Part shown: piece after piece, positions 11,070 to 62,342 of the stretch
Numbering within the stretch: position 1 is the first letter of the stretch
Layout of the letters: the number at the start of each line of letters is the position of its first letter
Source of the DNA: Podarcis erhardii
Lineage: Eukaryota
Assembly: GCA_964252035.1 (NCBI GenBank)
Contig: OZ176207.1
Strand: one strand, 5' to 3'
DNA: 64,000 nucleotides
The notes under the pieces: model-generated
Seen by the model: the letters and a program-made list of their open reading frames with translations, nothing else
What the model was told of the DNA's origin: nothing
Database searches by the model: none
Made by a program: the position numbers and the translations under genes

Positions 11070-13499
11070 CACCAGAATGGCATTAAAGTGGTCACTCTTC
11101 ACCTTCTGCACTTGAATGCAAGATGCTGGCACTTGTAATAATCCTGCCCCCTTGGAAAGCTTTCCGGCATCTCCATTGGGCATCAAGTTGTTATTGCTAG
11201 GCCCAACACCCAGAGATGCCCTGTACAAATAGGTGTGCGTAAGCTTCCCCATGCCTGCAACCTCGACCATCTCTGGTGTAAAATGAGAACTTGGGAGCAT
11301 GCGCACATTGTAGCGATACTTTTCATACTCATCTGTGGGGCAGCAGCAGCAGCAGCTGCATGAGGGACTAGTCCTACAGTGAAAAAGTCGAATGGCAAGA
11401 AGGAAGATTAGAAAGCCAAGGAAGACAAAGGAAAGGCAAGCTAGACCAATGATCAAGTAAAAGTTCAAGCTGGACAGCTGCTGCCCACGTGCTTCCAAGC
11501 TGTCATCAAAGTCTGGGAGCGCTTGTGGGAGAGAGTCAGCCAGCAGGATGCCCAGGGTCACGGAAGAGGAGAGGGGAGGCTCCCCACTGTCCTTTACCAA
11601 GACCACAACTTTGTGCTTGATGGGGTCACTAGACCTCATGGAGCGACTAGTCCTGACCTCTCCAGCATTGGGTGAAACTCGAAACAAACTGCTGTCGGAA
11701 GACTGCAAGAGGTGATAAGAAAGCCAGGCGTTCTGCCCACTGTCTGGGTCGTGGGCCACTACTTTGGCCACCAGGTAGTCAGCATCTGCCAAGCGGGGAA
11801 CAATTTCTACCGCCACTGAGCCGTTCCTGACCCCTGGGTACAAGATGATTGGGGCATTGTCATTCTGGTCAAGGATGGTAATGCTGACTATAAAGGCGGA
11901 AGCCAGGGCTGGAGAGCCATTGTCCTTGGCCTCCACTTGAAAATGGAAGCTCTGGAGTTGCTCAAAGTCAAAAATGCCCTTTGCATAGACAATTCCACTG
12001 TCTGCATCAATGGCCAAATAGCTGGTCAAGGAGCTGCCTTGGATGTCAATGTCCCTGAGTAGGTAGGAGACCCGACCATTCTCCCCCAGGTCTGGATCAG
12101 AGGCTGACACATGAAAAAGGGACACCCCAGGCTTGTTGTTCTCCATTACGGAAACTTCACGCATCTGGTTGAGGAACTTAGGGGGATTGTCGTTCACATC
12201 CGCAATGTGCACCCGCAGAGTCTTCTGAGTGGCGATGGGAGGGGAGCCCAGATCAGAGGCAGTGACAGTGATGTTGTATTCGCTGACCCGTTCCCGATCT
12301 AGAAGGCCGCTGGTGACCACACTGTAGTAACTATCAAAAGAGGACTTGAGTTGGAAGGGGATGTTGGTGGGGATCTGGCAGATGACTTTCCCATTCTCTC
12401 CAGGATCTTCATCGGTGATGCTCAGGAGCGCTATCACTGTGCCCAGAGAGGAATCCTCTGGGATGGGGCTAGAAAGAGAAGTAACAGTGATCTCCGGAGC
12501 ATTGTTGTTCACATCAGTTATTTCCACCAGCAGCTTGGCTACAGTGGACATGCCAAAGACCCCTTTATCTCTTGCTTCAACGAACATCTCCAGGAGGGGC
12601 TTCCGGGCGCCCAAACTCCCACTTACTCTTATCTCCCCGGTCTGGGGGTTGATGTGGAACATCTTCTGGAGCTCAGCAGGGGTGCTGTTGCTGAAGGCAT
12701 ACCGGACCTCCCCGTTCTGACCTTCATCTAAGTCTGTGGCATGCACCTGAGTGACCAGAGTGCCATTGGGGGAGTTTTCAGAGACGCTGGCCCTGTAGAC
12801 GGAATGCTCGAAGGCGGGGGCGTTGTCATTGGTGTCAAGGACGGTGACCACGACCTGGGCGTCTCCGGACCTCTGGGGCGTCCCTCCATCTTTGGCTGTG
12901 ACCACAAGCCTGTGCGTGGCTTGCTGCTCGCGGTCCAAGGGCTTCTCCAGCACCAGTTCCGGATACCTGCTGCCGTCCCCGCGCGTTTGCATTTCCAGTC
13001 GGAAAAGCTCGTTGGGGCTCAGCGTGTAGCTCTGCACGCCGTTGATGCCTTCGTCCGGGTCCTGGGCGTTGGGCAGGGTAAAGCGAGCTCCCGGCGCCAG
13101 GAACTCGGCCACGTTCAAATGGTACTCGTCTAGCGAGAAGATGGGGGCATTGTCGTTCACGTCCAGTATTTTAAACTGCATTTTATAAAGCTCCAAGGGG
13201 TTTTCTAGCACCAGTTCGTAATTCAGAGAGCAGGTAGGTTTCAGCGCGCAGATCTGCTCCCGGTCGATGGGCTCCTTGACAGACAAAGCTCCGGTGCTTG
13301 CATCGAGGCTAAAATATTGCTTGCTGGAGCTGGTGATCATGCGGAATTTCCGGGAGGGAAGCGTCGCGGCCACGATACCCAGATCCTGCGCTAGGTTCCC
13401 GACAGGCGTGCCGGGCTCCGTTTCTTCGGGGATGGAGTACTCTACTTGTCCATTGACGGTGTAGAAAATAAGGCAGCACACCATTAAATAGACCCGCAT
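11070..13499 (-). CDS. PCDHAC1: Protocadherin alpha-C1 variable exon (810 codons; signal peptide, EC1-6, TM, variable cytoplasmic part); splices to constant exons outside the window
   Basis: The first true ATG is at 13499 (the ORF-track start at 13562 is GTG); MRVYLMVCCLIFYTVNG|QVEYS. C1-diagnostic motifs are EFLAPGARFTLPNAQD, GDAQV, SNSTPAEL, EC3 GSLG..EARDKGVFG lacking DYE/DRE, TYLYRASLG and VPASCIQ. The donor GTG|GTAAGC at 11070/11069 is phase 0. Confidence 0.93.
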
Positions 13500-14340
13500 T
13501 CTTCTATCCCTGGCTTCCCCCTCAGCTCCCTGCAGACCGAGCCAACAGTACCATAATCCCACGTTCTCAGCAAATTCGCGGCGGCGGCAGCAGCAGCCGA
13601 GCGCACCGGAGCAGGAGCAGCCGCAGCAGCCAGAGACCCGCTGGCTACCAGGCGCGGGGAGAGCAGGCGCCGCTCTTCTTCTTCTTCTTCCAGGCGCCGG
13701 CCGAAGTCATGGCTCGCCCGCCCGCCCGCCCGCCCGCTTCCCTTGTGCTGAGCCAGCGAGAGCGAGCCCTGCGCGAAGGCAGCCGCTGCCTTTGGCTCGG
13801 GATGAGCTCACGGAGGGGGGCGAGGGGGAGAAGCGCTCCTCTGGCAGACGCGGGGGCGCCTCGCTGGAGCACAGCGCCGCCAAGGGGCCCGCGCGCGCGC
13901 CGCAGCCTCCCCAGCCCTGCCCCGACTACTGTATCAGTAGGTCAGCGCGGAAACGTCGCGGATGATGCTGCAGGGAAGCAGCCGCCGGAGGGGAGGGGGG
14001 CCGCGCTCCCCGCCCCGCGACCTGGGCCAAGGCGGGGGAGAAAAGCTTCCCTTCTCGCCACGCGCGCCGCGGCTCCGCCCGCGATGGGAAACGCCCAGCC
14101 TCGCTGCCGAGCGAGGCGGCGCCTACCTGGAAAGCGGGGCGCGATGCGCACGGATCGAAGCAGGGAGGGAGGGAGGCGGGAGCCGCATCTCGCCAGAAAC
14201 GTGACGAGAAACATGGAGGGCGGAGGGGGGAGCCGTGCGCCTCGTGCGCCTTTGCTTCTTCCCTTTCCTCCACGCCCAGTGATGCGCGCACACGAACACA
14301 CACCAACACGTCTCTGACCTCCATACGGCTGACTTCGGTT
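12560..14340. promoter_or_regulatory. CpG island over the PCDHAC1 promoter and 5' exon
   Basis: Very GC- and CpG-dense (e.g. gcgcgcgcgc at 13891) against a CpG-depleted background; edges estimated by eye. Confidence 0.85.
13873..13887 (-). promoter_or_regulatory. Candidate alphaC1 CSE/CTCF site
   Basis: CCCCTTGGCGGCGCT matches CCACTAGGGGGCGCT at 12 of 15 positions, has a CGCT core and the correct orientation, and lies 374 bp upstream of the ATG. The GC-rich context makes a chance match possible. Confidence 0.35.
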
Positions 14341-14572
14341 GGTGCCAGAATAGCGCCCAAAGCCACGCTAGCTCCCCACCTACCCTTCAGACGTCTCAAT
14401 AGCACCGAATGGACCTTGGGGTACCTTGGGGAGCTTTTAAGGATGGGAGGATGGGAGCTCCGAATCTGGGGCGCTGGTGGTGGACGACGACTGAGAATCC
14501 TAGACCCCTTTTCCTGGCCCCACGAATAACAATGGAGCTTACTTGTTGAGGCTTTAGAAGAGAATGGCTCTC

Positions 14573-14609
<37 letters not shown>
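14573..14609. repeat. (TAT)n microsatellite
   Basis: About 12 units, read directly. Confidence 0.95.
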
Positions 14610-15749
14610 TATTATCTCTAGCCCTTAAGCACCGGCTGCTTGAGAGTCTCGTTGCTGTGAGACTACAGTGTTTTTTCCTGGGGCGCCTCCTAAGACCGGG
14701 GCACCCCTGTGCCATAGGCTGCAATCCCGTACAAAAGCACACTCACTTGGGAGTAAGGCCCACTGAAGTCTATGGGGCCTACTTCTGCGTGGACGTAAAT
14801 AAGGTTACACTATCGAATTCCTTTGACGGGCTAATGAATTTATATGCGGGGAATAAGGTTAGTGGAGGCAGGGCAGAAGCAGAGGAAAGCTGGAAGAAGC
14901 AGAAGTCTTGGGTTTCTTGCCACCTGGCAAATCCCGAGGCTGCTCCGCCCCAGAGTAGGAGTTTTTGTTCGTACTTGCTTTACTGCCTCGCCACCTGGCT
15001 GACATGCCCTCGTGTTCCCGGGTGGATTTTGTGTTATGCCCCAGGGAGGCCTCTCTTGAGTTCCAGCGGGAAAATCTTCAGGACGACTCTTGGATCAGGA
15101 TGAGGCAATTGTTGCAGCTTGCAAGATGTGCTTGTAAACATAACGGAGACTTGTGGCACCTTAACGCCTGGCTTTCAAAACCTTTTCCTCTAGTCCTCGC
15201 TTTCAAGATAAAAATTTGCTCGCGCCACGCCAAATTTGCTAATATATTGCAAAGAAATACATTGGAAAACAAAAAGAAACAACTCTTAGCAATGATTGAT
15301 TTGTAACACAGAACACAGCTACTGAATAATATGATCGTGGGACATCCAGAAAGTATAAACAATGCAGCTACATAAGAACATGAATCAACCCCAAAAGGGT
15401 CTTCTCCAGCACCCGATCGAAAGGCGATTCTGGATCACAACTAGGATTATCATCAGTATCACTGGATGCTCTTGCTCTCATTTTGAAAGGGTGTCTATCC
15501 ATATTCTGCAAAAAAAAAAAAAAAAAAAAAAATTCTTTGATTGTCCTTGAATCTTCCCGCCACTCTTGCCATCTTCTCCTGCCCCACACCAGTGTGACAC
15601 AGCCACACCCTTTGAAAGCCCCTGTCTTAACGGCTTGGTCATCATCTTTGGTGGGTGTAGGACACACTTTGTTTTAATCTGCTGCTCTGCTTAAAACGGA
15701 GCGCCTTTGGGGGCCATTAAACGTCTCCTCATTACTCTGTGATTGCTTA

Positions 15750-31570: not shown

Positions 31571-33152
31571 TAGCAGCTGAGAAGTGTCAGTTGAGTATCT
31601 TATGGGTGGTATATAATGTTGGTCACACACACAAAAACTGAATGGGAACCAAAAGACAAGTCTTTCTAACTTCTCCAGTGGTGGTAAAACAATCTTACTC
31701 AGCTACGAGTGATTGCCAAAGAAAGAAAGAATATTCTTTCAGAGTTGTCCATACAAATTCACTCTAAGATCCTAACTACAAGTTACATTTTTTAAAAAAA
31801 TGTAAAATATTTTTTTGTGATACAAAACAAACAAATGTACAAGCATACCTCAAAGATATTGTAGGTTTGGTTTCAGAGCACCACAATAAAGCAAATATCA
31901 CAATAAAGCAAGACACACTTTTTTTGTTTGTTTCCCGGTGCATATTGAAGTTATGTGTACTCTATATTGTCATCTATTAAGCCAGGCCTCCCTAACTGCA
32001 GGGGCAAGAGGGGGAAAACCCAGCTCCAGCCCTAGACAGCTCTACTCCCAAGGCCAGAAGAGGGGCAGGGGCTGGGGAGGGGGGCTTTCTTCCCCTGGAA
32101 GCAGCCAGGCTGCCTGCAGCTGCACCCATATCCTCATAAGGAGCAATATCTGTGAAAAACAATAAAATGAGGTGTGGCTGTATTTTAACCATATTAATGG
32201 ATGCTATTTCTAAGGGGGTAATTCTGAGCAAAGAAACAGAGTGGGGAAGGCATGCTTCCCCCCATCTATCACTTCTCCACTCCAGGTTGCCTTCCCTGCC
32301 AAATGTTCCCCTCTGAATGGGGTCCCAAAAGCATTTGCCATTGCAAACGTACATTTGGAATTCTGCAAGAGAGAAAGCAACAGTGGGGAACAGAAAAAGC
32401 AACTGGAGGGGGAAAGAGTTAAGCACCTTCTTCTCCACTCCCCATTTCTTGCCTTATTTTAATCCTTTCTTAAAATACACCCTAAACAGAACAAACCATG
32501 TCTTAGATTGACACTAAATTATGAATTAATATAGACTTAAGCTTGTCAGTGGATGTATGTTCATTCACAATAAGTCATTCATTCAGCGAACAGCAGTTCT
32601 CCCTTGGCTATGACAGCTACGAAGGACATTAAAGGAGGACATTAAAACAGAGTGGTAATATCTGAAGTTAAGCTTTGAAGTCTACAAATCTTTGAGCAGC
32701 ATTTGCCTTGGAATCAATAGAACAAAAATGCACAGAAATGGGTAAAAAACATTCTTAGGTGCCTTATTAGGTGGTTGCAGTTAATGACAGAAGAATGAGC
32801 TCAGCCATCCATCCGCTATGAAAAATAATGAACAGAGAGATGAATTAATAAATTTAAAAATTAAGCCTCCATATAATTTCCCATTTCAGCAAAACAAAAA
32901 AAGTCCCACATTATCTAAGCGACACCATAAACAAGTATTGCAAATTTCACTTTAAAACAGAGTTGTACAAAGTAAATGCAAAATTGTTTAAAATTAATCA
33001 TAATAACCCCCAAAAGACACGCTTTGTGTGCTATCAGGAATCTCATTCTCTAAGAAAATTTCAATGGGAAAATTTACTTTTTATGTTGTTAGTGACTCCA
33101 CATGATAACACATCAGAAAAATTAAAGAAAGCAAACTCTCTTTACATCTCAC

Positions 33153-35522
33153 CTGCCCAGATATATTTGGGACCAGCTCCTTTCCATTCTGCAGTTCCCC
33201 ATTCTCTGAAAAGATAGGTATGTTGGGGGTAAAAACCATGAGGTCATTCTTGGCACCAGCCTCCCCAGCTGGAGCTGCCAGGATGTGGCTGTGGCGATTT
33301 GAATAGGACCAGCTGCCCACTTCGCTGGCACAAACCAGTGTGGCTGTGCCAGGGCCATACATCACGGGCTCCTTGGGTTGACACTGGCATCGCAGAGCCA
33401 TATACACAATGATTGCCAGCAGAAACAATGTGGAAACTGAGCAGATGGCAATGATCAGGTAGATATTGGAATTGCCCGCCAAGGATCCTGAGTTCACTCC
33501 CAACATGGGAAGCCGGGTATCAGTGTGAACAGCCTGAGCACTTGATATCAGTGATACACTGAATGTGACTGTGGCTGACAACACTGGTTTGCCATGATCC
33601 TTCACTACTATCAGCAGATTCTGGCTGCTGCCACCTTCTGTCTCATCCAGGGCTTGGGTTGTACTGATCTCACCGCTGTATAACCCAACGCGCCAAGGAC
33701 CACTTTTCACATCATGCAATTCATAGCGCAGCCATGCATTGTAGCCTGAGTCAGCATCCAAGGCACGGATCTTGCCCACTACATGTCCAGCTTCTAGTGG
33801 GGCTGCCAGCAAGATGGGAGCCTCCTCTGGCTCAGACACTGCTGGTGCATTATCATTCTCATCCACCACAAAGACTTGCACCGTCACATTACCACACAGG
33901 GAGGGCAGCCCAGCATCCTTGGCCCTCACTTGGAACTCCAGCAGCTTCAGCTCCTCATAGTCCAAGGGTTGCAAGGCATAGACCTTCCCGCTCTCCGAGT
34001 GCACCGAGATGTAGCTTGTCAGGGGCCAAAGCTTCTCATCCATCGAGTAGCTAACCAGAGCATTCTCAGCCACATCTAGGTCTGTGGCAGACACAGTGAA
34101 GATGTGAGCACCCGGTGGGTTGTTCTCCTTCACAAAGACCATGTAGGAGGGTTGTGCAAATGTAGGTGCATTGTCATTTACATCACTGATGGGCACAACC
34201 AGACTGCTGCTGGTTGACAGCAATGGCTCCCCTTGATCTTGTGCCATCACCAACAGTCTATATTCAGCTACTTTCTCCCGATCCAGAGGCTGAGCTATCA
34301 CCAGTGAATAATAATTCTTGAAGTTGGACATCAGCTTGAAGGGGAGCCCAGGTGGCCACAAGGAGCAGCTTACTTGCCCATTGGCACCAACATCTCTATC
34401 AGAAATGCTGAGCAAGGCCACCACTGTCCCTAGTGGAGAGTCCTCTGGCACTGGCACTGACAGTGATGAGACTGATATCTCAGGAGCATTGTCATTCACA
34501 TCCAAGACCTCAATCAGGACTTTGCAATGTCCTTTCATTGGTGGGGAGCCTTTGTCTGTTGCTTCTACCCTAATTTCACCTAACTTAATACTTTCAAAAT
34601 CAAGTTCTCCATTTAATATGATTTGTCCATTGCTTGAATCTAAACTAATCAGTGCACCTAAATTCTGTGGGTTAACACTTCGAATTGAATATATAATGTC
34701 TTTGTTAATTCCTTCATCGAGATCTGTTGCATTGAGACAGATTATTAACGTTCCTATTTTTGCATTTTCAAAAACTTTAACTTGATACACAGACTGATTA
34801 AAAACTGGTGCATTATCATTCGTATCCAGCACACTGATTAGCAACTGAGCTGTGCCAGTTTGCTCTGGTTTTCCTCCATCAGTGGCCGTAAGCAATAAAT
34901 TGTATACGTGAGTTAATTCTCGATCAAGAGGTTTCTTTAACACAAGAACTAAAGACTCACCATGCTTCTCATTGTTTTGAACATCCAAGGTGAAATACTC
35001 ATTGGGACTGAGTTTGTAGCTGAGATGAGAGTTTGAACCAATATCGTCATCAGAAGCTCCCTCTAGTGGGAAGGATGAACCTGGAAGTCTAGATTCAGAA
35101 ATATTCAGGTTTTGCCCAGCAGCTGGGAATATAGGAGCATTGTCATTGATATCCTTGATCTCCACTTCTACATGAAAGACTCTTAAGGGTTTATCCAGGA
35201 TCACCTCCAGGTGAATCATGCATACAAGGGTCTTGGCGCACATCTCCTCTCGATCTATCCGGGAATTAACAAATAAAATTCCATTTTGGACATTTACCTC
35301 TAAGTAGTCCTCATGGCCTTGGGATATCATCCGGAACATCCGGGGCATCAGCTCCTCCACCTGCAGCCCCAGATCCTGGGCAATGCGGCCCACGAAGGTG
35401 CCATGCTGGGATTCTTCCAGGACAGAGTAATGGAGCTGGCCACTTCCCATCAACCAGACTCTGTGGATTAGAATCAGCTGCAGCAGCCAGCTCTTTACCA
35501 GGGGGCATTGGTTCAAAGACAT
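33153..35522 (-). CDS. PCDHA: Protocadherin alpha alternate variable exon, last before alphaC1 (790 codons)
   Basis: The ATG at 35522 opens a 28-aa signal peptide followed by [22 protein letters not shown]. It has six cadherin repeats, [12 protein letters not shown] and the alpha-type tail [17 protein letters not shown]. The donor CAG|GTGAGA at 33153/33152 is phase 0. The paralogue number cannot be assigned. Confidence 0.95.
35055..35069 (-). promoter_or_regulatory. Exonic CTCF site (eCBS) within the FPLEGA codons
   Basis: CCACTAGAGGGAGCT, a near-consensus CTCF core about 670 bp downstream of the pCBS and in the same orientation. Confidence 0.75.
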
Positions 35523-35723: not shown

Positions 35724-35738
35724 AGCGACATCTTGTGA
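35724..35738 (-). promoter_or_regulatory. Pcdh conserved sequence element / promoter CTCF site (pCBS), canonical CGCT form
   Basis: The minus strand reads TCACAAGATGTCGCT, 202 bp upstream of ATG 35522, matching the CGCT-core CSE of mammalian Pcdh promoters. Confidence 0.85.
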
Positions 35739-39460: not shown

Positions 39461-40644
39461 TCTTTCAGTGACACATTCACGATTTCCTGGAATATACCCA
39501 TCATATCTTGATGGGAAAATATTATAAGTGAGAAAGAGCAAAAATTGTCGAGTCACACTATTTTTGTTGCTGTTGCATGCATGTTCGTGTGCATTTTATC
39601 ACTTTACCTTTGTGAGCCACCCTAAAAACTGTGCTAATGGGTGGTCAATATAAATACACTAAATGACTAAATTAAAACCCCAAGCAACCTTTCAGCATCC
39701 TTGAACTATAATAAATGGAACACATCTACACAATATCGGCAAGACCATAGAACAACGGGTAATTTACTAAACTCAACACCACAGCCATATCAGTACAAAC
39801 ATGAGCAATTGTATCCTTGAGGTGCTTAGCAAAAATATCGCCAGAGGTTGCTGAGGCACCATAAGATCTGTCTGAAAACCCACATGAAGCAGCTCTCTCA
39901 CCACCTAAACAGATGTGCTGGACAGAGATGTGCATGGTGATGGGAAAATAATTTCTTTGTTACTATATCTACCACAGAGTAAGGTCCAAAATGAACTCCA
40001 GAAAAATGAAGGACCTAAATGGACTTTAGGTAGTGGGAGATGGCACAAACTGACCAGGGATTTGACAGAACCATTTGCCATGTCATGAGGAAAGTCAGCA
40101 AAAATGAAATAGAAACCATTCAGAGCCTCCTCTTTCTGAAGGTGGATCATCTAAACTTGTCCTTCATTCCTGTGTAGGTTTGAGGAATGGTTTGAGGTTT
40201 TGTTAATGCTTGATACTTGGCCACAACTAATGTGCTACACTGTTCTTTATTTTAATTCAAAAACCAAATAACCAATATTAAACACAGTCAAGCACTGGTT
40301 GTCCAAATACTCTGAACAGAAAGAGAAGCATGTTTCAGGGGTATGCTGGCGCATATTCTTGCTTCCAACAACAGCAAAAACACTGGCTGTTTTTGCATCC
40401 AAAAGATCACCTTCACAGGTATAACTGGAATCAGGCCAATGACATTTGCCTATAAAATAAGAATAGCACTACCTTTACCCCTGCAACATTCTCATTAAAG
40501 TCTACCAAAAATCATAAGTGTGAATCAAAGTAATATTTTAATTATTGAAAAGTCAAATACCCAACCATGTCACACATGCCAAAACAGAATAGGTTTTTCA
40601 TAGTAGTTTTTTCACTGATAATAGTATCAATTCTTGTAACTCAC

Positions 40645-43014
40645 CTGCTCAGATGAATTTGGAACTGGTTCCTTCACAACTCCCACTTGCCCATTTTCCA
40701 CACAGGCCGGAATGCTGGGGCTGAAGACCATGAGGTCACTCTTGGCACCAGCCTCCCCACCCATGCCCGCCAGAAGATGGCTGTGACGATTTGAATATGA
40801 CCAGCTGCCAACTTCACTGGCACATACCAGCGTGGCTGTCCCAGGACCATACACCACAGCCTCCTTGGCCTGGCAACGGCATCGCAGCGCCATGTATACT
40901 ATGATCGCCAGCAGGAACAAGCTGGACACAGAGCAAATGGCAATGATCAGGTAGACGTTGACATTTTCCACCTGGGGCTTTGGGCTCCCTCCCTTCCTTG
41001 AAAGGTGAGGGTCGCCATGGACAGCCTGGGAATTCATCACCATGGACACACTCAAAGTAGCTGTGGATGACAAAGCTGGCTTGCCATGGTCCTTCACTAG
41101 AACGAGAAGTCTTTGGCTGTAGCTGCCCTCTGCGTCATCCAGGGAACGTGCGGCGCTGATCTCCCCACTGTATAATCCCACACGCCAAGGGCTGCTAATT
41201 GCCTCGTGCATCTCATAGCGCAGCCATGCATTGTAGCCAGAGTCAGCATCCATGGCATGGATCTTGCCCACCACCTGTCCAGCAGCCACAGGAACAGTCA
41301 AAGAGATGGGAATCACTTCTGTCCCATACACTACAGGTGTGTTATCATTCTCATCCACCACAAAGACTTGCACCGTCACATTGCCACACAGGGAGGGCAG
41401 CCCAGCATCCTTGGCCCTCACTTGGAACTCCAGCAGCTTCACCTCCTCATAGTCCAAGGGTTGCAAGGCATAGAGCTTCCCACTCTCTGAATGAACAGAG
41501 ATGTAGCTTGACAGGGGCCAGAGCTTCTCGTCCAGCCAGTAGCTGATCAGGCTGTTCTCAGCCACATCTGGGTCCGAGGCAGACACCGTGAAGATGTGAG
41601 CACCTGGTGGGTTGTTCTCCTTCACAAAGACCGTGTAGGAAGACTGAGGAAAAGCAGGAGCATTGTCATTCACATCACTGATTGGCACCACCAAGGTGCT
41701 GCTGGCTGACAGTGATGGAGTCCCTTGATCCTGGGCAGTCACTACCAGCCTATACTCAGCCTCTTGTTCCCTATCCAGAGGCTGAGCTAGCAACAGTGAA
41801 TGATAATTCTTGAAGGTGGAAAGTAGCTTGAAGGGGGTTCCATGTGGCCATAAGGAAGTGCTCACTTGTCCATTGGCCTCAATATCCCTGTCTGATATGC
41901 TTATCAGGGCCACCACCATCCCCAGAGGGGAGTCCTCTGGAACAGGTACCAGCAGAGACATCACTGAAATTTCAGGTGCATTATCATTTACATCTAGAAC
42001 CTCAATCAGAACTTTGCAATGCCCTGACAAGGGGGGATTCCCCGTGTCTTTAGCCTCAACTTGTATTTCGTAAAAATTCTTGTCTTCAAAATCCAGATTT
42101 CCTTTCACGTGAATCTCACCAGTCTTTTGATCAAGTACGAACTTTTCTTTTCCATTTGCTGGAGAAAAAGTGCTTGATGTATATGTGATCTCCTTATTTG
42201 TGCCCTCATCTAAATCGGTAGCATTTAGCTTAATTACTAATAGCCCATTCTCTGAGTTTTCTAATAAATGGACTTTATAAACTGACTGGTTAAATACAGG
42301 AGGATTGTCATTTGCGTCTAGCACTTTGATTATCAACTGGACTGTGCCAGTGAGCTGGGGCTGGCCTCCATCAACTGCTGTGAGTAAAAGTTGGTGAGCT
42401 GCACATTCTTCTCTATCAAGAGGTTTGTTTAAAACAAGAAATAAAGATGCACCACGTTCATGATTTTCTATTGTCTCTAGACTGAAATGTGGATTTGTAC
42501 TAAGTCTGTAGCTAAGGAGCGAGTTTGCACTGATGTCTGCATCAGAGGCTCCCTCTAGAGGAAAACGCGAATCACGAGAGCTAGACTCTGCAATAGTAAA
42601 TTGCTTTTCTGTTACAGGGAAAATGGGGGCATTGTCATTTATGTCGGTGATCTCCACTTCCACGTGGAAAACCTTCAGAGGTTTATCTACAAGGGCCTCC
42701 AGGTGAATAACACACACAGCACTCCTGTCACACAACTCCTCCCTGTCTATCCGGGAATTCACAAATAAAATCCCATTCTGAACATTTACCTCAAAATACT
42801 CCTCCTGTCCTTTGGACACCATTCGGAACAGCCGAGGCACCAGCTCCTCCACCTCCAGCCCCAGGTCCTGGGCGATGCGGCCCACAAAGGTGCCATGCTG
42901 GGATTCCTCTGGCACAGAATAATGGAGCTGGCCGCTCCCCATCAACCAGGATGTGTGGAGAAGAACCAGCTGCAGTAGACATCTCTTTCCAGAATTTTTC
43001 TTCCATGCAAGCAT
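40645..43014 (-). CDS. PCDHA: Protocadherin alpha alternate variable exon (790 codons)
   Basis: The first ATG is at 43014 (the ORF-track start at 43098 is TTG); MLAWKK..GSG|QLHYS. EC1-6, TM and the alpha tail are intact. The donor CAG|GTGAGT at 40645/40644 is phase 0. Confidence 0.95.
42547..42561 (-). promoter_or_regulatory. Exonic CTCF site (eCBS)
   Basis: CCTCTAGAGGGAGCC within the FPLEGA codons, about 690 bp from the pCBS. Confidence 0.7.
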
Positions 43015-43235
43015 GACAAATTCAGATACAAATCCCAGCAATGTCTTGCCTTTTTTGAGGAAGTGATGAGCAGAGTCCAAGACGTTCCTCCAAACCAATG
43101 GCTAAGAGATCAGTTGACTCTGGTATTGCAGCTAATGTTTGATGTCTCTGCTGTGTATTTGACAGACAGGATATTCAGCACATTTGAGGGAGGAGCTCTG
43201 AATTTTCAGTCTTCTTAAAAAACTCCTTAAACAAC

Positions 43236-43250
43236 AGTGACACCTTGTGA
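43236..43250 (-). promoter_or_regulatory. CSE/pCBS, CpG-less variant
   Basis: TCACAAGGTGTCACT, 222 bp upstream of ATG 43014; positional homologue of 35724-35738. Confidence 0.75.
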
Positions 43251-44687
43251 CTGAGTTTTGAACTGGAGAATCAGACTATTTATTACCTTTTATGTTTTCA
43301 AGTAAATGTTTTTTAATAATTCTGTGCCAATACATACTATTTGATACAGTTTTACTTCCAAGTAAATTCCTTAGCCTCCATTTGTTTTTCTATTCAAGTT
43401 TCATTTATTTTATTATATTCCATTAACTCAGCTCCTTTTTGGAATCTTTCCCCCCTTTATGTCAGTTATGCATCATCACTGTTTTCATTCTTCATCTGCA
43501 CACTCTTAGGTGCCATATGTACTTCCAGAAGGAAAAACTTCCATCTTCACATTCACATGCCAAGATTCACATGGCATTCCCTGGTAAAACTGCTGTGAAC
43601 TGTCATGTCCTTTTTACTTTCCTTTTCTGGTAGAATTTTTTTTTGGGGGGGGGGCGGGGTTTGAAATGTTATCAGCTTCCCTTTTTCCAGCTCCATTGTT
43701 AGGGGTGTCTCTCACATGAACAATGTTTGCCCCTACACAAACACACTGGGCATATGAAATTGCTTTATACTGAATCAGACCATTGGCCATCCAGTCTATC
43801 ATGAGTGGCTCTGATTGGCAGAACGTCTTCAGGGTCTGCAGAATAATTCATTCTCATCCACTTCTGTCTGGAATCGAGTGGGATTTTGTGCACACATCTG
43901 TATAAAGCATGAGCCTTCCAAGGATATTTGCTAGCTTCTATGTTTCTTCCTTCCTCTGCTTGGTATGCAATTTGTTGTTAATTTTGTTGTCAACAAGTGA
44001 AAATGGGTTGTGAATAAAAGCTGCCCCCCCACCTGCCCCAGGAAAACTGGTTCTTGGATGAGTGGCTACTTCTTTCCTTCTGTGCTTGCCTCTTTCCATG
44101 TTCGCCATTGCTTAGAGGGGAGTCTAATGTTTTTATTGAAATTCAAAGGATTTTCTGGGACCAAGAAATACTGTTGTAATGGATTTCAGATTATGTAACA
44201 CCAAAGGGCATAACTGGAATATGGAACAATAGATGGCTGATGGTAAAGAGCTGCAACATGGGATTATAAAAAAAAATACCAGTAAATCAAAATGGGATAG
44301 AATATCACCTCCTTTTTAGCCAAGAGGAAGACATGAGGATGCCCAGTGTCAGGCTGCTGAATTAGATCTCCTAATAGTTAATTCTTGAGAAGTTTTGAAC
44401 ATGGCAATTCTGATCCATTAGAGACTTCTGTTGCAAGTACTTTTGATATCTCTGAGGTTTATCAGTCCATGAATTCAAGTTTCACATTAGCATCCATTTT
44501 ATATTCTCTGATCAGGATAATGGCAACAACATCTGGAACGTGTGGGACTAGAGAAAAACTTTTGATAATCGGGCAGTCCTTTTCTGTTAGCCCTTAGGGC
44601 TTCCTGTTTAGCGCAAAGACAAAGGTTCGGGCTGCTTAGGCTGGAATGGTTCCAGACATACTATACCTTTCCATAATAAGCTTCTAG

Positions 44688-48422: not shown

Positions 48423-49399
48423 CACGTGGGTAAATCTAGCTGACTGCTCATTATGAGATAATCTTGCTTCTTCTGCCTTTTGTTATTTTCACCCATAGAG
48501 TCCCCTGTGTTGATTGGCAAGGTAGTATTTGGTCACTTAGCACACTTATTAGTTGATTTTAATTTGTTTAATATTAAATAAGTTTAAGAACCTTGGACTA
48601 TTTTCTCCTCTACCACCAAATGTATCCTTATTTCTACACACAAACACACACACCATGTTAACATATCTGGCTATGAGACAGATAAAAGCACTGCCCCAAT
48701 ATTAACTGAAAAATCAGTTTTAAACATAATCATGTCACATGAGACTAGGTGAGATCACAGCATGCCAATACCTGCTCTGGCTCCAGAGAACATTCCTAGC
48801 AAAATTACATCAGGTGGTTCTCCCACAGAATGCATTAAAGCTTGGGAAGACTACATTCTTGACATGTCTGGTGGACCTACCCAAGGATTCAAACCTTCTG
48901 GCAGCACATATGTAGCATATTTTCAAAAAGAAGAGAAAGTAGTCATCCAATATTTTTGCTGCTAAATATAGTACATGGCCATAATATTTTCACAAGATAA
49001 AAGGATTTATTTCCATTTCTTCCCATGGCAGCAAACTGGACAAACCCACACCCTGAAGGAGTCTAATAGCATTCTTTTGATGACCCTATGGTTAAACAGA
49101 ATATGGGCACTCCTTATTGTGGAGAATTTATTGAATCAGGGTAAAGAAAAGAGCCCTGGTTTGTCCACCACCACCCCAAAAAAATAATAATAGTCCAACA
49201 TGGAATTATTCTAGTTTATGTAGAAGCAATCTCTGCATGTATAGAATGCCATTTTAAATCTATATTGAACATGCTTATTGCATCAAGACTGATCCTAAAC
49301 TGGCATACAGAAATTGTCATTCAGTTTGCAAAAAACATGGTATTAGAAGAAAAATATATTGTGTTTTTTCAAGGATTCTAATAGTTGCACATGACTCAC

Positions 49400-51772
49400 C
49401 TCTCCAGATGCATTTGGGAGCAGTTCCTTCCCATTCCTAACCTCCCCATTATCTGCAAAAACAGGAATGTTGGGGCTGAAGACCATGAGGTCACTCTTGG
49501 CTCCAGCCTCCCCGCTCACACCTGCCAGGATGTGGCTGTGGCGATTGGAATATGACCAGCTGCCCACTTCACTGGCACATACCAGTGTGGCTGTACCAGG
49601 ACCATACACCATGGCCTCCTTGGCCTGGCAACGGCATCGCAAGGCCACGTAAAAGATGACTGCTAGGAGGAACAAGCTGGACACGGAGCAGATGGCAATG
49701 ATCAGGTAGACATTGACATTGTCCACCAAAGACTTTGGGCTTTCACCTGTCCTGGAAAGGCGGGTGTCAGTCTTCACAGCCTGGGCACTTGCCACCAGTG
49801 ACACACTCAGGGTGGCTGTGGCCGTGAGTGAAGGTGTGCCATGATCTTTCACCAACACAAGGAGATTCTGGCTGCTTCTGCCCTCCACCTCATCCAGGGC
49901 ACGTGTGGTACTGATCTCCCCACTGTACAGCCCCACACGCCAAGGGCCAGCGGTCAACTCATGCATCTCATATCTCAACCATGCATTGTACCCTGAGTCA
50001 GCATCCAGGGCACGGATCTTGCCCACCATGTGTCCAGACAACACAGGAGCCACTAGAACAATTGGAGTCTCTTCTGATGAACCTGCCACTGTAGGCGCAT
50101 TGTCATTCTCATCCACCACAAACACCTGAACTGTAGTGTTGCCACACAAGGAGGGCAACCCAGCATCCTTGGCCCTCACTTGGAACTCCAGAAGCTTTAT
50201 GTCCTCATAGTCCAAGGGCTGCAAAGCATAGACCTTCCCACTCTCCGAGTGCACCGAGATGTAGCTTGTCAGGGGCCAGAGTGTCTCATCGATCCAGTAG
50301 CTGACTAGAGCATTCTCAGCCACATCCGGGTCTGAGGCAGACACAGTGAAGATGTGGGCTCCCGGTGGATTATTCTCCTTCACAAAGACCGTGTAGGAGG
50401 GCTGCGTGAAAGCTGGAGCATTGTCATTTACATCACGGATAGGAACTAAGAGGCTGCTGCTAGCAGACAATGGTGGAACGCCTTGATCTTGAGCTGTCAC
50501 TACCAAGCTGTACTCAGCCACCCGCTCCCGATCCAAAGGCTCTGCTAGAGTTAAGGAGTAGTAGTTCTTGAATGTTGATGCTAATTTGAAAGGCAGCCCA
50601 GGGGGCCACAAGGAGCAACTCACTTGCCCATTGGCTTCAGAGTCCCTGTCCGAGATGCTGACGAGGGCCACCACTGTCCCTGGAGGAGAGTCCTCTGGCA
50701 CTGGCACAGCAAGAGAAGTCACAGAAACTTCTGGAACATTGTCGTTCATGTCTAACACCTCAATAAGAACTTTACAGTGTCCAGACAAAGGCAAACTGCC
50801 TTTATCTTCTGCAACAATTTGAAGGTCATATAGATTAATGTCTTCAAAATCTACTTTCCCAATCACTCTGACCTCACCTGTGTTGGCATTTATGCTAAAT
50901 ATCTTTGTGAAACGGGGTGGTACATTATTACTAAAAAAATAAGTGATTTCCCCATTAATTCCTTCATCTAAATCTGTAGCATTCAGTTTAATAACCGTTG
51001 TTCCATTAGCTGCATTTTCCCATAGCTTTACCTTGTAAGTGGATTGGTTAAATACAGGAGGGTTGTCATTTGCATCCAGGACACTGATCACCAGCTGGAC
51101 TGTGCCTGTGAGCTTTGGTTTGCCCCCATCAGTGGCTGTGAGTACCAAGTGATGCACAGGAGTCTTCTCTCTGTCAAGTGGGGTTTTTAGCATAAGTACT
51201 GGAGATTTACTCTGGTCCTCATCACCTCCCGATTCAAGAATGAAATAGTCATTAGGGCTGAGCTTGTAGGTCAGCAAAGCATTGACATCTGTATCTGCAT
51301 CAGAGGCACCAGTTAACAGGAAACGGAAACCTGGTAAACGTGATTCTGCAATAGTCAAATTCTGTTCATTTACTGAAAAAAGAGGAGCATTGTCATTTAT
51401 GTCCTTGATCTCCACTTCCACATGGAAGACCCTGAGAGGTTTATCCACAATCATCTCCAGGTGAATGGAGCACACAGGGTTCTTGCTGCAAAGCTCCTCC
51501 CTGTCTATCCGGGAATTCACAAACAAGATTCCATTTTGCACATTTACCTCAAAATAGTCTTCATGTCCTCTAGACACCATCTGGAACATCCGAGGCACCA
51601 GCTCTCCAACGTCCAGCCCCAGATCCTGGGCAATACGGCCCACAAAGGTGCCATGCTGGGATTCCTCCGGCACAGAATAATGGAGCTGGCCGCTCCCCAT
51701 TTCCCAGGCTGTGTGGAGAAGAACCAGCTGCAGCAGCTGCTTTACCACGGAAGGATTCTGCCAAGGAACCAT
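49400..51772 (-). CDS. PCDHA: Protocadherin alpha alternate variable exon (791 codons)
   Basis: The likely start is 51772, giving a 28-aa leader; an in-frame upstream ATG lies at 51805, and the ORF-track start at 51823 is GTG. EC1-6, TM and the alpha tail are intact. The donor GAG|GTGAGT at 49400/49399 is phase 0. Confidence 0.94.
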
Positions 51773-52012
51773 TGCAAATACAGACACAAATCCCACCAGT
51801 GGCATCTCCCCTTTAAAAATCACCTTTCTTGAAGAAGTGAAGAGCAGGGTCCAAAGAGCTCATCAGGGTTGGTGTAATCATTTGAATAGATTCCAGTAGT
51901 CTTGCATCTGGTGTGCGATATCCCTATTGTGAATCTCACAGGCAGGATTTTCAGGCTCTCTAAGGGAGGAGCTATGAATTCTCTCTGTTCTTAAAACATT
52001 TCCTTAGGCAAC

Positions 52013-52027
52013 AGTGACCCCTTGTGA
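52013..52027 (-). promoter_or_regulatory. CSE/pCBS, CpG-less variant
   Basis: TCACAAGGGGTCACT, 241 bp upstream of ATG 51772; the flanks are paralogous to 43186-43275. Confidence 0.72.
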
Positions 52028-59360: not shown

Positions 59361-59754
59361 TGTCTGTAAGCTTGCCAGATTTAGTTGCTTAGCTGCTGCT
59401 AGAAACATAATATTGACCTATATGAATCTAAGGTCTGATGCAAGCAGGCAATTTCAATTGAAACTGTCTTGGTCATTCTGACAGACCACCTTTACCAGCA
59501 AAGGGACGATAGAAGTGCAACTCATGATTCTCCTGAACCTTCAGCAATTTTTTTAACAACTGGCCATGTTATCCTTCTGGAATACCTCTCCTGGATGAGA
59601 TTGGGAGACAGGAAAACACACTGATACTTTTAATTATGTGTGAAATCATGATCTACAGTAAATCTCCAGCTGGATATTTGTTTTTTATGTAGATGCTGAC
59701 TTAGTAAAACAATATAGAAAAATTAAAGAAGGAAAGCCATCTCCTGAGACTTAC

Positions 59755-62130
59755 CTGTCCAGATGAGGTTGGAGCCATTTCCTTCCCATTCCCAAGCTCT
59801 CCATTCTCCATAAAGGCAGGGATGTTGGGGGTAAAAACCATGAGGTCATTCTTGGCACCAGGCTCCCCACTCGCAGCTGCCAGGATATGGCTGTGGCGAT
59901 TTGAATAGGACCAGCTGCCCACTTCGCTGGCACAAACCAGTGTGGCTGTGCCAGGGCCATACACCATGGGCTCCTTGGGTTGACACTGGCATCGCAGAGC
60001 CATATACACAATGATTGCCAGCAGAAACAATGTGGAAACTGAGCAGATGGCAATGATCAGGTAGACATTTTTGTTCTCTTCAAGCGGCTTTGAGCTCCCT
60101 CCTGCTCTAGAATGGTAGCCATCTGTGTGGATGGCCTGAGCACTGACCACCAGTGACACACTCAGGGTGGCTGTGGTTGACAGCATTGGCTTGCCATGAT
60201 CCTTCACCACTACCAGCAGATTCTGGCTGCCAGCATCACCCTCCATCTCATTCAAAACACGAGTAGTGCTGATCTCCCCACTATATAGGCCCACCCGCCA
60301 AGGACCGCTAGTTGACTCATGCAGCTCATAGTGAAGCCATGCATTGTAGCCTGAGTCAGCATCCAGGGCACGGATCTTGCCCACCATCTGTCCAGCAACC
60401 AAAGGGATCACCAGCAAGATGGGAGTGTTCTCTGGCCCAGATACTGTTGGGGCATTATCATTTTCATCCACCACAAAGACCTGCACCATCACATTGCTGT
60501 GCAAGGAGGGCAATCCGGCGTCCTTTGCACTCACTTTGAACTCCAGCAGCTTCAGTTCCTCATAATCCAAGGGCTGCAAAGCATAGACATTCCCACTTTC
60601 TGAGTGTACCGAGATGTAGCTTGACAGTGGCCAGAGGTTCTCATCTATCCAGTAGGTGACCAGAGCATTCTCAGCCACATCTGGGTCTGAGGCAGACACA
60701 GTGAAGATGTGGGCTCCCGGTGGATTATTCTCCTTCACAAAGACCGTGTAGGAAGTCTGAGCAAAAGCAGGTGCATTGTCGTTCACATCACCGATGGGCA
60801 CAACCAGGGTGCTGCTGGCTGACAAGGGTGGGTCCCCTTGGTCTCTTGCTGTTACAACTAGTTTGTATTCTGCAACCTTTTCTCGATCCAGAGGTTCATT
60901 TAGCACCAGTGAGTAGTAATTCTTGAAAGTGGATACCAGCTTAAAGGGGAGCCCAGGAGGCCACAGAGAGCAGTTTACTTGTCCATTGGTGCCAGCGTCC
61001 TTGTCTGAGGCACTGATTAGGGCCACCACTGACTCCAGTGGGGAGTCCTCTGACACAGGTACTGATAGCGATGTCACTGATACTTCCGGGATGTTGTCAT
61101 TTACGTCCATTATTTCTATGATGACATTGCAGTGCCCTGAGAGAGGAGGGGTTCCTTTGTCTTTCGCCTCAATTTCAATATCATACAGATTGATATCTTC
61201 GTAATCCACTTTTCCTTTGACCCTAATCTCACCTGTAACTGAATCTATACTGAATGTCTTTTTTACATTGGGAGAAACATGCTTACTGAAATAGTAGGTG
61301 ATTTCCTTGTTACTTCCTTCATCTAAGTCTGTTGCATTGAGATGAATAACCAATGTTCCATCTGCCACATTTTCTAACAGTTTCACCTTATAAACAGATT
61401 GATTAAATACAGGGGCATTGTCATTTGCATCAATCACAGTGATCTCAAGATGAACTGTGCTTGTGAGTTCTGGTTGACCCCCATCAGTAGCTGTTAGCAC
61501 TAAACGATGCACAGGGATTTTTTCTCTGTCCACAGGTTTCTTTAACACAAGCACTAATGATTTACTGTGCCTGTCGTTGATTTTCTCTTCAACAACAAAA
61601 TATTCTGTGGAGTTGAGCTTGTACTTCAGTTGAGCATTAGCACCAACATCTGCATCTGAGGCTCCCTCTAGAGGGAAATGAGCACCTGGCAGTGTTGACT
61701 CTGCGACACTCAAAATCTCCTCGCCCTCCGAGAAAACAGGAGCATTGTCATTTATATCCCTGATCTCCACTTCCACATGAAAAACCCGCAGGGGCTTATC
61801 CAGGATCACCTCCAAGTGAATGGTACACACAGGATTCTTGCTGCAAAGCTCCTCCCTGTCTATCCGGGAACTAACAAACAAGATCCCATTTTGCACATTT
61901 ACCTCTAAATAATCCTTGTGGTCTTTGGAAACCATCCGGAACATCCGAGGCACCAGCTCTCCCACCTCCAGCCCCAGATCCTGAGTGATGCGGCCCACAA
62001 AGGTGCCATGCTGGGATTCCTCAGGCACAGAATAATGGAGCTGGCCGCTCCCCATCATCCAGGCTTTGTGGAACACAATCAGCTGCAGCAGCTTCATTGT
62101 CACCTGGAAATCTCTTTGCAGAAAAGGCAT
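59755..62130 (-). CDS. PCDHA: Protocadherin alpha alternate variable exon (792 codons)
   Basis: The first ATG is at 62130 (the ORF-track start at 62184 is TTG), giving a 29-aa leader to QLHYS. EC1-6, TM and the alpha tail are intact. The donor CAG|GTAAGT at 59755/59754 is phase 0. Confidence 0.95.
61660..61674 (-). promoter_or_regulatory. Exonic CTCF site (eCBS)
   Basis: CCTCTAGAGGGAGCC within the FPLEGA codons, about 670 bp from the pCBS. Confidence 0.7.
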
Positions 62131-62327
62131 AGCAAATGCAAGTACTGATGATCTGTTATAAATTACCTGGCTATAACTGAGCAAATGTTGACTGACCTGG
62201 ATAGAAAGGAGTCAATGCCGGTCCTTTTACATTGAGGATCGAAGGTTTTCCAATGAAGGAAGAGGCAGATTTTTTATCTAGTCAGAGGGAGGAGCGTGTC
62301 CTTTCAGAAATGGTCTTGTTAGTCAAT

Positions 62328-62342
62328 GGCTCCCCCTTGTGT
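62328..62342 (-). promoter_or_regulatory. CSE/pCBS, CpG-less variant
   Basis: ACACAAGGGGGAGCC, 198 bp upstream of ATG 62130; fits the CTCF core CCACYAGRKGGCGC with A at position 12. Confidence 0.7.

What the first reader, a model, noticed from the sequence alone, without database searches (positions are those of the whole stretch)
43014..43260. Alternate promoters are CpG deserts and three of four CSEs have lost the CGCT CpG
The CSE cores read TCACAAGATGTCGCT (35724), TCACAAGGTGTCACT (43236), TCACAAGGGGTCACT (52013) and ACACAAGGGGGAGCC (62328). CACT is the expected product of methyl-CpG deamination. CpG counts between ATG and CSE, by eye, are 4, 1, 1 and 3, whereas alphaC1 sits in a full island. 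Counting the exonic positions too, only 1 of 8 CBS positions has a CpG, yet all ORFs are intact. Stochastic isoform choice in this lizard may therefore run largely without the CpG-methylation switch described in mammals, for example through graded CTCF affinity or another silencing mark (inference).
Basis: partly seen in the sequence, partly recalled or inferred. Interest (0 to 1): 0.72.

Follow-up and report, generated by a model that had tools for sequence, protein, structure and literature searches.

The report
CpG-poor lizard protocadherin-alpha promoters
In this lacertid lizard, and in every other squamate sampled, the neuron-identity genes of the protocadherin-alpha row keep their conserved CTCF-type promoter motif but have lost the CpG-rich sequence that mammals, a bird and a turtle have there, so the mammalian DNA-methylation switch cannot act in the same way at most of these sites.

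Summary
Four protocadherin-alpha alternate exons on the minus strand each have a CSE/CTCF-like motif 197-240 bp upstream of the ATG, spelled exactly as written. Only the copy at 35724 keeps the CGCT CpG. CpG counts and the "1 of 8" count are correct, and alphaC1 sits in a true CpG island.

New here:
- Bat, pigeon and turtle promoters all keep CGCT (12/12), against 8/20 in nine squamate species.
- The CACT form is old, shared by geckos, an anguid and the lacertid, and it is the conservation peak of its promoter.
- The losses map to two paralogue clades, so they represent one to three old events.
- Every squamate alternate exon is at bulk-genome CpG density (o/e 0.14-0.34, against about 1 in bat and pigeon and 0.6-0.9 in turtle).
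- The promoters are not poorer in CpG than the surrounding DNA.

The mechanistic inference is only partly supported. CpA is an accepted alternative at CTCF core positions 12-13. Published in-vitro work disagrees on whether methylation there blocks CTCF. Frog and zebrafish alpha CSEs already lack CGCT. Expression, methylation and CTCF binding could not be tested.

First readers of this scan noted similar CSE CpG loss in two other windows of this genome; I did not check those notes.

The parts
43236..43250 (-). CSE / promoter CTCF-like core of alternate exon a_40k, TCACAAGGTGTCACT (CpA at core positions 12-13, no CpG)
   Evidence: approximate CTCF matrix score 12.6; 12/15 bases invariant across lacertid, anguid, skink and python
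43015..43235 (-). 221-bp interval between the a_40k ATG and its CSE; it holds a single CpG that is not conserved in other squamates
43187..43196 (-). second conserved promoter box GCTCCTCCCT, about 40 bp downstream of the CSE; the same box is at 51963-51972 and 62286-62295
   Evidence: 5 matches against 0.16 expected; 3 are at equivalent promoter positions
40627..43014 (-). alternate variable exon a_40k, given as the ORF to its stop. The likely splice donor lies at the codons Gln-Val (GT) near the 3' end. CpG o/e 0.29.
   Evidence: 95% identical to a Zootoca vivipara 'protocadherin alpha-6-like' protein
42547..42561 (-). exonic CTCF-like site (eCBS) of a_40k, CCTCTAGAGGGAGCC, in the codons Pro-Leu-Glu-Gly-Ala, 689 bp downstream of the CSE; no CpG
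35724..35738 (-). CSE of a_33k, TCACAAGATGTCGCT; the only one of the four that keeps the CGCT CpG
   Evidence: identical in the Elgaria and Tiliqua orthologues
35055..35069 (-). eCBS of a_33k, CCACTAGAGGGAGCT; no CpG
33081..35522 (-). alternate variable exon a_33k (ORF); CpG o/e 0.24
52013..52027 (-). CSE of a_49k, TCACAAGGGGTCACT; no CpG
   Evidence: identical in Elgaria, Eublepharis and two Gekko paralogues; 15/15 bases invariant
51305..51319 (-). position of the eCBS in a_49k, where the motif is destroyed (codons Leu-Leu-Thr-Gly instead of Pro-Leu-Glu-Gly)
   Evidence: the same loss is present in Elgaria, Eublepharis and Gekko
49343..51772 (-). alternate variable exon a_49k (ORF); CpG o/e 0.27
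62328..62342 (-). CSE of a_59k, ACACAAGGGGGAGCC; remodelled 3' half, no CpG
   Evidence: identical in the Zootoca orthologue
61660..61674 (-). eCBS of a_59k, CCTCTAGAGGGAGCC; no CpG
59701..62130 (-). alternate variable exon a_59k (ORF); CpG o/e 0.24
12751..14750 (.). CpG island over the promoter and 5' part of the C-type exon (ATG 13499). The exon is alphaC1 by its position as the first C-type exon after the alternates. It serves as the contrast case.

Best explanation
These are the four 3'-most alternate promoters of a lacertid protocadherin-alpha cluster. Each keeps the family's promoter CTCF-type site (CSE) in gene orientation, and three keep the exonic site about 670-690 bp downstream. In the squamate lineage the alternate promoters and exons became ordinary, CpG-depleted DNA. 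The most likely cause is that they were methylated in the germ line, unlike the island-like copies of mammals, birds and turtles. The CpGs inside the CTCF cores were replaced by old substitutions: CpG to CpA at CSE positions 12-13 in two paralogue clades, and Gly GGC to GGA in the exonic site of the common ancestor of all squamate alternates. Selection then held these CpG-free motifs constant, because CpA or A at these positions still fits CTCF. As a direct consequence, at seven of the eight sites in this window CTCF access cannot be gated by CpG methylation inside the core. Shown here: the sequences, their age, their conservation and the CpG statistics. Inferred: germ-line methylation as the cause; that CTCF binds these sites; and that promoter choice here relies on something other than core-CpG methylation, such as sparse flanking CpGs, chromatin marks or antisense transcription.
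For: - Motifs and spacing. Seven of the 12 best CTCF-like hits in the window are the 4 CSEs and 3 eCBSs, all in gene orientation.
- Gene identity: (best hits are squamate protocadherin-alpha proteins; 95% identity to Zootoca).
- Polarity: CGCT is present in 12/12 bat, pigeon and turtle CSEs against 8/20 squamate CSEs.
- Age: the CACT form is identical in lacertid, anguid and two geckos. The losses fall in clades B and D of the tree, while clades A and C keep CGCT.
- Selection: the CSE is the conservation peak. In the a_49k type, 15/15 core bases are invariant and 93% of core +-15 bp, against 31% for the whole upstream region.
- Exon CpG o/e: 0.14-0.34 in 19 squamate exons from 9 species, against 0.98-1.20 in bat and pigeon and 0.63-0.91 in turtle.
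- Decay pattern: at 31 CpG sites shared by turtle, bat and pigeon, squamates have CG at 24% and TG or CA at 52%.
- CTCF tolerance: CTCF accepts CpG or CpA at positions 12-13 (PMC10484683).
- Motif strength: approximate matrix scores for the lizard CSEs are 12.6-14.9, against 7.6-15.0 for bat.
Against: - No methylation, CTCF-binding or expression data for any squamate were obtainable. The read runs came from a related species and gave almost no reads.
- One promoter in the window and 8/20 squamate promoters overall keep the CGCT CpG under apparent selection. This suggests the CpG still matters where it survives.
- Some squamate CSEs carry a CpG at core positions 2-3, the position shown to be methylation-sensitive in vitro: Zootoca_10103 and Rhineura_12935.
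- The 5' 600 bp of some exons keep slightly more CpG (o/e up to 0.54 in Elgaria).
- The TG/CA excess is also what a general transition bias would give.
- Promoter samples are paralogues and orthologues, not independent observations.
Confidence: 0.6

Rival explanations
1. The loss is neutral and changes nothing. The CGCT CpG lies at CTCF core positions 12-13, where G and A are interchangeable and where methylation does not block binding. It was never the switch, and its replacement by CpA is ordinary drift within a degenerate motif position in a CpG-depleted genome.
For: PMC10484683 and PMC6222495: full methylation at positions 12-13 slightly enhances CTCF binding or leaves it unchanged, while methylation at positions 2-3 inhibits it. 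PMC3333863: methylating the alpha SSE-CSE did not affect the CTCF complex in EMSA, and (citing Kawaguchi 2008) CSE methylation is mosaic whatever the transcription state. PMC4978886: frog and zebrafish alpha CSEs lack CGCT.
Against: The review PMC7811963 (citing Guo 2012 and a structural study) states that methylation of the CGCT CpG precludes CTCF binding. CGCT is kept in 12/12 outgroup promoters and is invariant in squamate clade A despite strong CpG decay around it, which argues for selection on the G. This rival also does not explain the loss of the whole exon island.
Confidence: 0.3
2. The methylation switch persists but has moved. Promoter choice is still gated by DNA methylation, through the few CpGs flanking the CSE and in the 5' exon, through CpGs at core positions 2-3 in other paralogues, or through neuronal non-CpG methylation of the CAC created by the CACT box.
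For: 9-13 CpGs remain in the first 600 bp of each exon. Zootoca_10103 and Rhineura_12935 have CpG at core positions 2-3, and Gekko has a CpG directly 5' of the core. In mouse the methylation of the 5' exon, not the CSE, tracks transcription (PMC3333863, citing Kawaguchi 2008). PMC10484683 calls both CpG and CpA canonical methylation sites in mammalian DNA.
Against: The residual promoter CpGs of a_40k and a_49k are not conserved in any other squamate (0 of 5). CpG density equals the non-island background. None of the four CSEs in the window has a CpG at positions 2-3. In vitro, methylation at position 12 does not inhibit CTCF (PMC10484683).
Confidence: 0.2
3. The CpG-less genes are not stochastically chosen at all. 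They are either silent relics or constitutively expressed, like C-type isoforms.
For: No expression could be shown. The a_49k type has only one CTCF-like site.
Against: The ORFs are intact, and orthologues are 82-98% identical across families separated by long times. The promoters are conserved with a sharp peak at the CSE. Unlike the C-type exon they have no CpG island, so they do not look like constitutive promoters.
Confidence: 0.08
4. The pattern is chance or an assembly artefact.
For: None found.
Against: There are three exact 12-base pattern matches at equivalent promoter positions against 0.008 expected. The same sequences occur in independent assemblies of Zootoca, Elgaria, Eublepharis, Gekko, Python and Tiliqua.
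Confidence: 0.01

Closest known systems
Mammalian Pcdh-alpha alternate promoters (CSE/pCBS plus eCBS, CGCT box, CpG islands, methylation and antisense-lncRNA/TET switch)
   Same: A tandem row of ~2.4-kb variable exons. A CSE lies about 200 bp upstream of the ATG in gene orientation, and a second CTCF-like site lies in the codons Pro-Leu-Glu-Gly-Ala about 670-690 bp downstream. The C-type exon has a CpG island (PMC7811963; bioRxiv 10.1101/360206).
   Different: Three of four CSEs and all eCBSs lack any core CpG. One exon has no eCBS. Promoters and exons are at bulk CpG density (o/e 0.24-0.29), against about 1 in the bat exons sampled here. BMC Biol 2023 (PMC10463633) describes prominent islands flanking each mammalian variable promoter.
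Xenopus tropicalis and zebrafish Pcdh-alpha CSEs without the CGCT box
   Same: There is published precedent that alpha CSEs can exist without CGCT while keeping the rest of the motif and its position about 200 bp upstream (PMC4978886, which cites Noonan 2004 for zebrafish).
   Different: In squamates the loss is partial and specific to paralogue clades (8/20 kept). It is demonstrably derived from a CGCT ancestor shared with turtle, bird and mammal. I could not read the frog or fish sequences here.
Canonical CTCF core sites with CpA at positions 12-13
   Same: CACT places C-A at core positions 12-13. Structures show that ZF3/ZF4 accept unmodified, hemi- or fully methylated CpG, or CpA, at these positions (PMC10484683).
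   Different: Like the mammalian alpha CSE, the lizard CSE is non-canonical at positions 1, 5 and 11 (12/15 consensus matches by eye; approximate matrix scores). Binding has not been measured.
CpG-poor tandem arrays with stochastic choice from heterochromatin (olfactory-receptor type)
   Same: AT-rich, island-free promoters in a tandem array whose members are chosen sparsely. PMC10463633 contrasts this class with mammalian clustered protocadherins.
   Different: This is only an analogy. No chromatin data exist for the lizard genes, and they retain CTCF-type sites that olfactory receptor promoters are not known for.

Membership tests
Clustered protocadherin alpha, alternate variable exon | Single large exon (~2.4 kb) encoding a signal peptide, six cadherin repeats, a transmembrane segment and a short cytoplasmic part | tested here: met
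   ORFs run 795-813 codons from the ATG. The best database hits are squamate 'protocadherin alpha' proteins carrying Cadherin_2, Cadherin and Cadherin_C_2 Pfam domains, with 95% identity to a Zootoca protein.
Clustered protocadherin alpha, alternate variable exon | Tandem array in one orientation, followed by C-type exons | tested here: met
   Four alternates and one divergent C-type exon lie on the minus strand at 7-9 kb spacing, with a 22-kb gap before the C-type exon.
Pcdh promoter CSE (promoter CTCF site) | Conserved ~22-bp element about 200 bp upstream of the start codon, in gene orientation | tested here: met
   The element lies 197-240 bp upstream on the same strand as the gene and aligns with the bat, pigeon and turtle CSEs.
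Pcdh promoter CSE (promoter CTCF site) | CGCT box | tested here: not met
   Present only at 35724-35727. The other three read CACT, CACT and AGCC. The CSEs therefore work like a CSE by position and conservation but lack this named feature, as published for frog and zebrafish alpha (PMC4978886).
Pcdh promoter CSE (promoter CTCF site) | Bound by CTCF/cohesin | not testable with these tools
Pcdh-alpha exonic CTCF site (eCBS) | Second forward CTCF site about 700 bp downstream of the CSE, inside the coding exon | tested here: met
   Present in three of four exons, 668-689 bp downstream of the CSE, at the same codons as in bat and turtle. It is absent from a_49k.
CpG-island promoter (GC >= 0.5, CpG o/e >= 0.6 over >= 200 bp) | Island over the promoter or 5' exon | tested here: not met
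   No 500-bp stretch at any alternate promoter or exon qualifies. Only 12751-14750, 15751-17500 and, marginally, 46251-46750 qualify.
Methylation-gated Pcdh-alpha promoter choice (mammalian model) | Differential CpG methylation of CSE and eCBS that tracks stochastic expression | not testable with these tools
   No lizard methylome could be reached, and the laid RNA runs gave almost no reads. The substrate, a core CpG, is missing at 7 of 8 sites.

The most novel reading that the evidence does not exclude
Squamates have given up CpG methylation as the gate for protocadherin-alpha promoter choice, and possibly, by unchecked notes on other windows, for the whole cluster. Their CTCF sites are CpG-free by old, selected substitutions, and their exons have lost the islands that mammals, birds and turtles keep. 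Choice would then be set by a methylation-independent layer: heterochromatin marks, antisense transcription, or neuronal CAC methylation of the cytosine at core position 12 created by the CACT box. That would make lizards a natural experiment separating CTCF looping from DNA methylation.
Probability: 0.2. Interest if true: 0.8.

Novelty: new variant of a known kind. Interest (0 to 1): 0.55.

Why it matters
The current model of how a neuron picks its protocadherin-alpha isoform rests on methylation and demethylation of CpGs at two CTCF sites inside island-like exons. It comes entirely from mouse and human. Here a whole order of amniotes keeps the CTCF-type sites under strong constraint but lacks most of the CpGs and all of the islands. 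If lizard neurons still choose isoforms stochastically, DNA methylation at these sites cannot be essential to the choice. If they do not, the island architecture marks the origin of the mechanism. Either outcome is directly testable with a brain methylome, CTCF profiling and single-nucleus RNA-seq in a lizard. The finding also sharpens an unresolved conflict in the literature over whether methylation of the CGCT box blocks CTCF at all.

Tried and rejected
1. Expression and transcription start sites. The look-up of sequencing runs found no run on record as RNA that holds the stretch. The runs laid belong to a related species (contigs about 97% identical). Two bulk RNA runs gave 2 and 0 reads, and a single-cell run gave 16 partly fitting reads confined to the exon. 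This is too little to call expression or a start site.
2. Tuatara and crocodilian outgroups. A second protein search with a turtle query returned only turtles and mammals in its 120 rows, so the loss could not be dated relative to tuatara.
3. Pogona. The lookup of P0083 found no gene on record.
4. Frog sequences. The Xenopus paper's supplement holds sequences. Typed proteins are not accepted by the locus tools and I did not paste them, so the frog state rests on the paper's text only.
5. Guo et al. 2012 (PMC3529044) is not held. Its claim is cited through the review PMC7811963.
6. The anole cluster paper (PMC2764143) has no CSE or CpG analysis.
7. My first motif pattern was mis-specified and missed three CSEs. 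It was corrected.
8. The reading 'desert, poorer than background' was rejected: 11 CpGs observed against 13 expected.
9. The two exonic plus-strand copies of GCTCCTCCCT are the antisense reading of the conserved codons Arg-Glu-Glu-Leu, not a promoter box.
Full report
**What is in the window.**
All large ORFs are on the minus strand. Four encode alternate protocadherin-alpha variable exons, with ATGs at 35522, 43014, 51772 and 62130. Their N-termini end in the family's [11 protein letters not shown]motif. A fifth, divergent C-type exon starts at 13499. The protein from 40627-43014 is 95% identical to a Zootoca vivipara 'protocadherin alpha-6-like' protein and 87% identical to a Podarcis protein, and all strong hits are squamate alpha protocadherins. 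The window therefore comes from a lacertid lizard.

**Check of the observation.**
- Three exact matches to TCACAAGNNGTCNCT compare with 0.008 expected by chance.
- CpG counts in the ATG-CSE intervals are 3, 1, 1 and 3.
- The exonic sites sit in the codons Pro-Leu-Glu-Gly-Ala, 668-689 bp downstream of the CSE. They read CCACTAGAGGGAGCT, CCTCTAGAGGGAGCC and CCTCTAGAGGGAGCC. The fourth exon (a_49k) has Leu-Leu-Thr-Gly there and no motif. '1 of 8 with a CpG' is therefore correct.
- The C-type exon lies in a real island: the 1 kb upstream has GC 0.68 and o/e 0.91.
- One correction: the promoters are not poorer in CpG than their surroundings. The four 500-bp upstream stretches hold 11 CpGs against 13 expected from the non-island background (o/e 0.20). 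They are simply not islands.

**Comparison with other species.**
I fetched alpha loci from Zootoca, Elgaria, Eublepharis, Gekko, Python, Phrynosoma, Tiliqua and Rhineura, and from a turtle (Chelydra), a pigeon and a bat. The promoters align across all of them at the CSE.
- Every outgroup CSE reads ...CGCT: bat 6/6, pigeon 4/4, turtle 2/2.
- Among 20 squamate promoters, 8 keep CGCT. These are the a_33k type (identical in lacertid, anguid and skink), both Phrynosoma promoters and all three Rhineura promoters.
- Twelve have lost it. The a_49k-type CSE TCACAAGGGGTCACT is letter-for-letter identical in the window, Elgaria, Eublepharis and two Gekko paralogues.

**Gene tree.**
All squamate alternates form one clade relative to turtle, bat and pigeon, and split into four groups:
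- A: a_33k type, all CGCT.
- B: a_40k type, CACT, or CCCT in Elgaria.
- C: Phrynosoma and Rhineura genes, all CGCT.
- D: a_59k type (GAGCC) plus a_49k type (CACT, including the geckos).

'Three of four' in this window therefore reflects one to three old events, not ongoing decay. The window samples only the 3' end of the cluster.

**Are the CpG-less CSEs functional sequence?**
Yes, by conservation. In the a_49k type, 15/15 core bases and 93% of core +-15 bp are invariant across lacertid, anguid and gecko, against 31% for the whole 600-bp upstream region. The a_33k type gives 15/15 and 78% against 42%. The few remaining promoter CpGs of a_40k and a_49k are not conserved in any other squamate (0 of 5). 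A second box, GCTCCTCCCT, about 40 bp downstream of the CSE, is also conserved.

**The larger pattern.**
- The whole alternate exon is CpG-poor in every squamate sampled: o/e 0.14-0.34 and 18-56 CpGs per 2.3 kb, in 19 exons from 9 species.
- Bat exons score 0.98 (about 185 CpGs), pigeon about 1.2 (about 300 CpGs) and turtle 0.63-0.91.
- This holds for the squamate genes that keep CGCT as well.
- At 31 CpG sites shared by turtle, bat and pigeon, squamates have CG at 24% and TG or CA at 52%. This fits methyl-CpG deamination but also a plain transition bias.
- The exonic site lost its CpG through Gly GGC to GGA in all four squamate clades. That points to a single event in their common ancestor. 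It also changes core position 12 from C to A, so 'retained' is a prediction, not a fact.

**What the literature adds.**
- The anole cluster paper did not look at CSEs or CpGs, and I found no paper on CTCF or methylation at lizard protocadherins.
- Frog alpha CSEs, and zebrafish ones by citation, are already reported to lack the CGCT box (PMC4978886). CGCT-free alpha CSEs are therefore not new in kind.
- CGCT corresponds to CTCF core positions 12-15. Structures show that positions 12-13 can be CpG or CpA and that ZF3/ZF4 accept both. Full methylation there slightly enhances binding, while methylation at positions 2-3 inhibits it (PMC10484683, PMC6222495).
- One EMSA study found that methylating the alpha SSE-CSE did not affect the CTCF complex. 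It also recalls that in mouse the methylation of the 5' exon, not the CSE, tracks transcription (PMC3333863).
- The review PMC7811963 states the opposite for the CGCT CpG.
- The mammalian model of antisense transcription and demethylation of both sites is in bioRxiv 10.1101/360206.
- Mammalian variable promoters are described as flanked by prominent islands, unlike other stochastic arrays (PMC10463633).

**Reading.**
- Shown here: the motifs, their age, their constraint and the loss of island character.
- Inferred: squamate alternates have long been methylated in the germ line; CTCF still binds; and gating by core-CpG methylation is impossible at 7 of the 8 sites here, so any switch must use sparse flanking CpGs, non-CpG methylation or chromatin.
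- Whether lizard neurons choose isoforms stochastically is unknown.
- The read data were uninformative.
- Two unchecked first-reader notes report the same CSE CpG loss in two other windows of this genome 250-370 kb away: 8 of 11 and 7 of 9 promoters. They suggest the pattern extends along the cluster. I could not test them.

**Verdict.**
The losses are old and specific to paralogue clades, and the missing exon islands are the stronger signal. The mechanistic claim remains an untested inference that published CTCF biochemistry weakens for the CSE CpG specifically. I classify this as a new variant of a known promoter architecture, of moderate interest.

Noticed in passing
window 15751-17500: A second CpG island (GC 0.50-0.64, o/e 0.69-0.91) lies 2-4 kb upstream of the C-type exon with no long ORF. 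Another first-reader note places a candidate antisense transcript here.
   Followed up: no
window 46251-46750: A marginal CpG-rich stretch (GC 0.53, o/e 0.60) lies between alternates a_40k and a_49k. It is the only near-island in the alternate part of the window.
   Followed up: no
window 43187-43196, 51963-51972, 62286-62295 (minus strand): A second promoter box, GCTCCTCCCT, lies about 40-50 bp downstream of the CSE. It is conserved in squamates and recognisable in turtle (TCCTCCCCC) and pigeon (GCTCCGCCCC). In a_33k it reads GCCCCTCCCA. The factor that binds it is unknown.
   Followed up: partly
window 51305-51319; L002 near 2240; L003 and L011 at the equivalent codons: The missing exonic CTCF site of a_49k is old. 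The Pro-Leu-Glu-Gly to Leu-Leu-Thr/Ala-Gly change is shared with Elgaria, Eublepharis and both Gekko paralogues, so this gene type has had a single CTCF-like site since before the gecko split.
   Followed up: partly
L001 about 9745 (Zootoca gene upstream of the a_59k orthologue); L010 upstream of 12935 (Rhineura): These CSEs read TCGCTAGAGGTCACT and TCGCACGATGTCGCT. They carry a CpG at CTCF core positions 2-3, the position reported as methylation-sensitive in vitro.
   Followed up: no
L001-L011 and window (tree): All squamate alpha alternates form one clade apart from turtle, bat and pigeon copies. One-to-one orthology of alternates does not extend across amniote classes, but it holds within squamates for at least three gene types.
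   Followed up: partly
L005 (pigeon) 9341, 16572, 23220, 34346: The four pigeon promoters are nearly identical over about 300 bp and extremely CpG-rich (36-44 CpGs per 300 bp). Their CSE (GCACACGGTGTCGCT) has two CpGs. This looks like concerted evolution.
   Followed up: no
L004 (Chelydra) 10001-11647 and 18054-19397: Both turtle variable exons are open for only 549 and 448 codons in this assembly, and the annotated protein fuses them (1344 aa). The cause is probably assembly or annotation error rather than real pseudogenes.
   Followed up: no
L011 (Gekko japonicus) 471-2851 and 10001-12382: Two tandem paralogues have almost identical promoters and signal peptides, which indicates a recent duplication or gene conversion.
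   Followed up: no
window 13873-13887 (minus strand): The best CTCF-like match in the alphaC1 island is weak (CCCCTTGGCGGCGCT, approximate score 6) but ends in CGCT. No hit of 10 or more lies upstream of the C-type exon.
   Followed up: no
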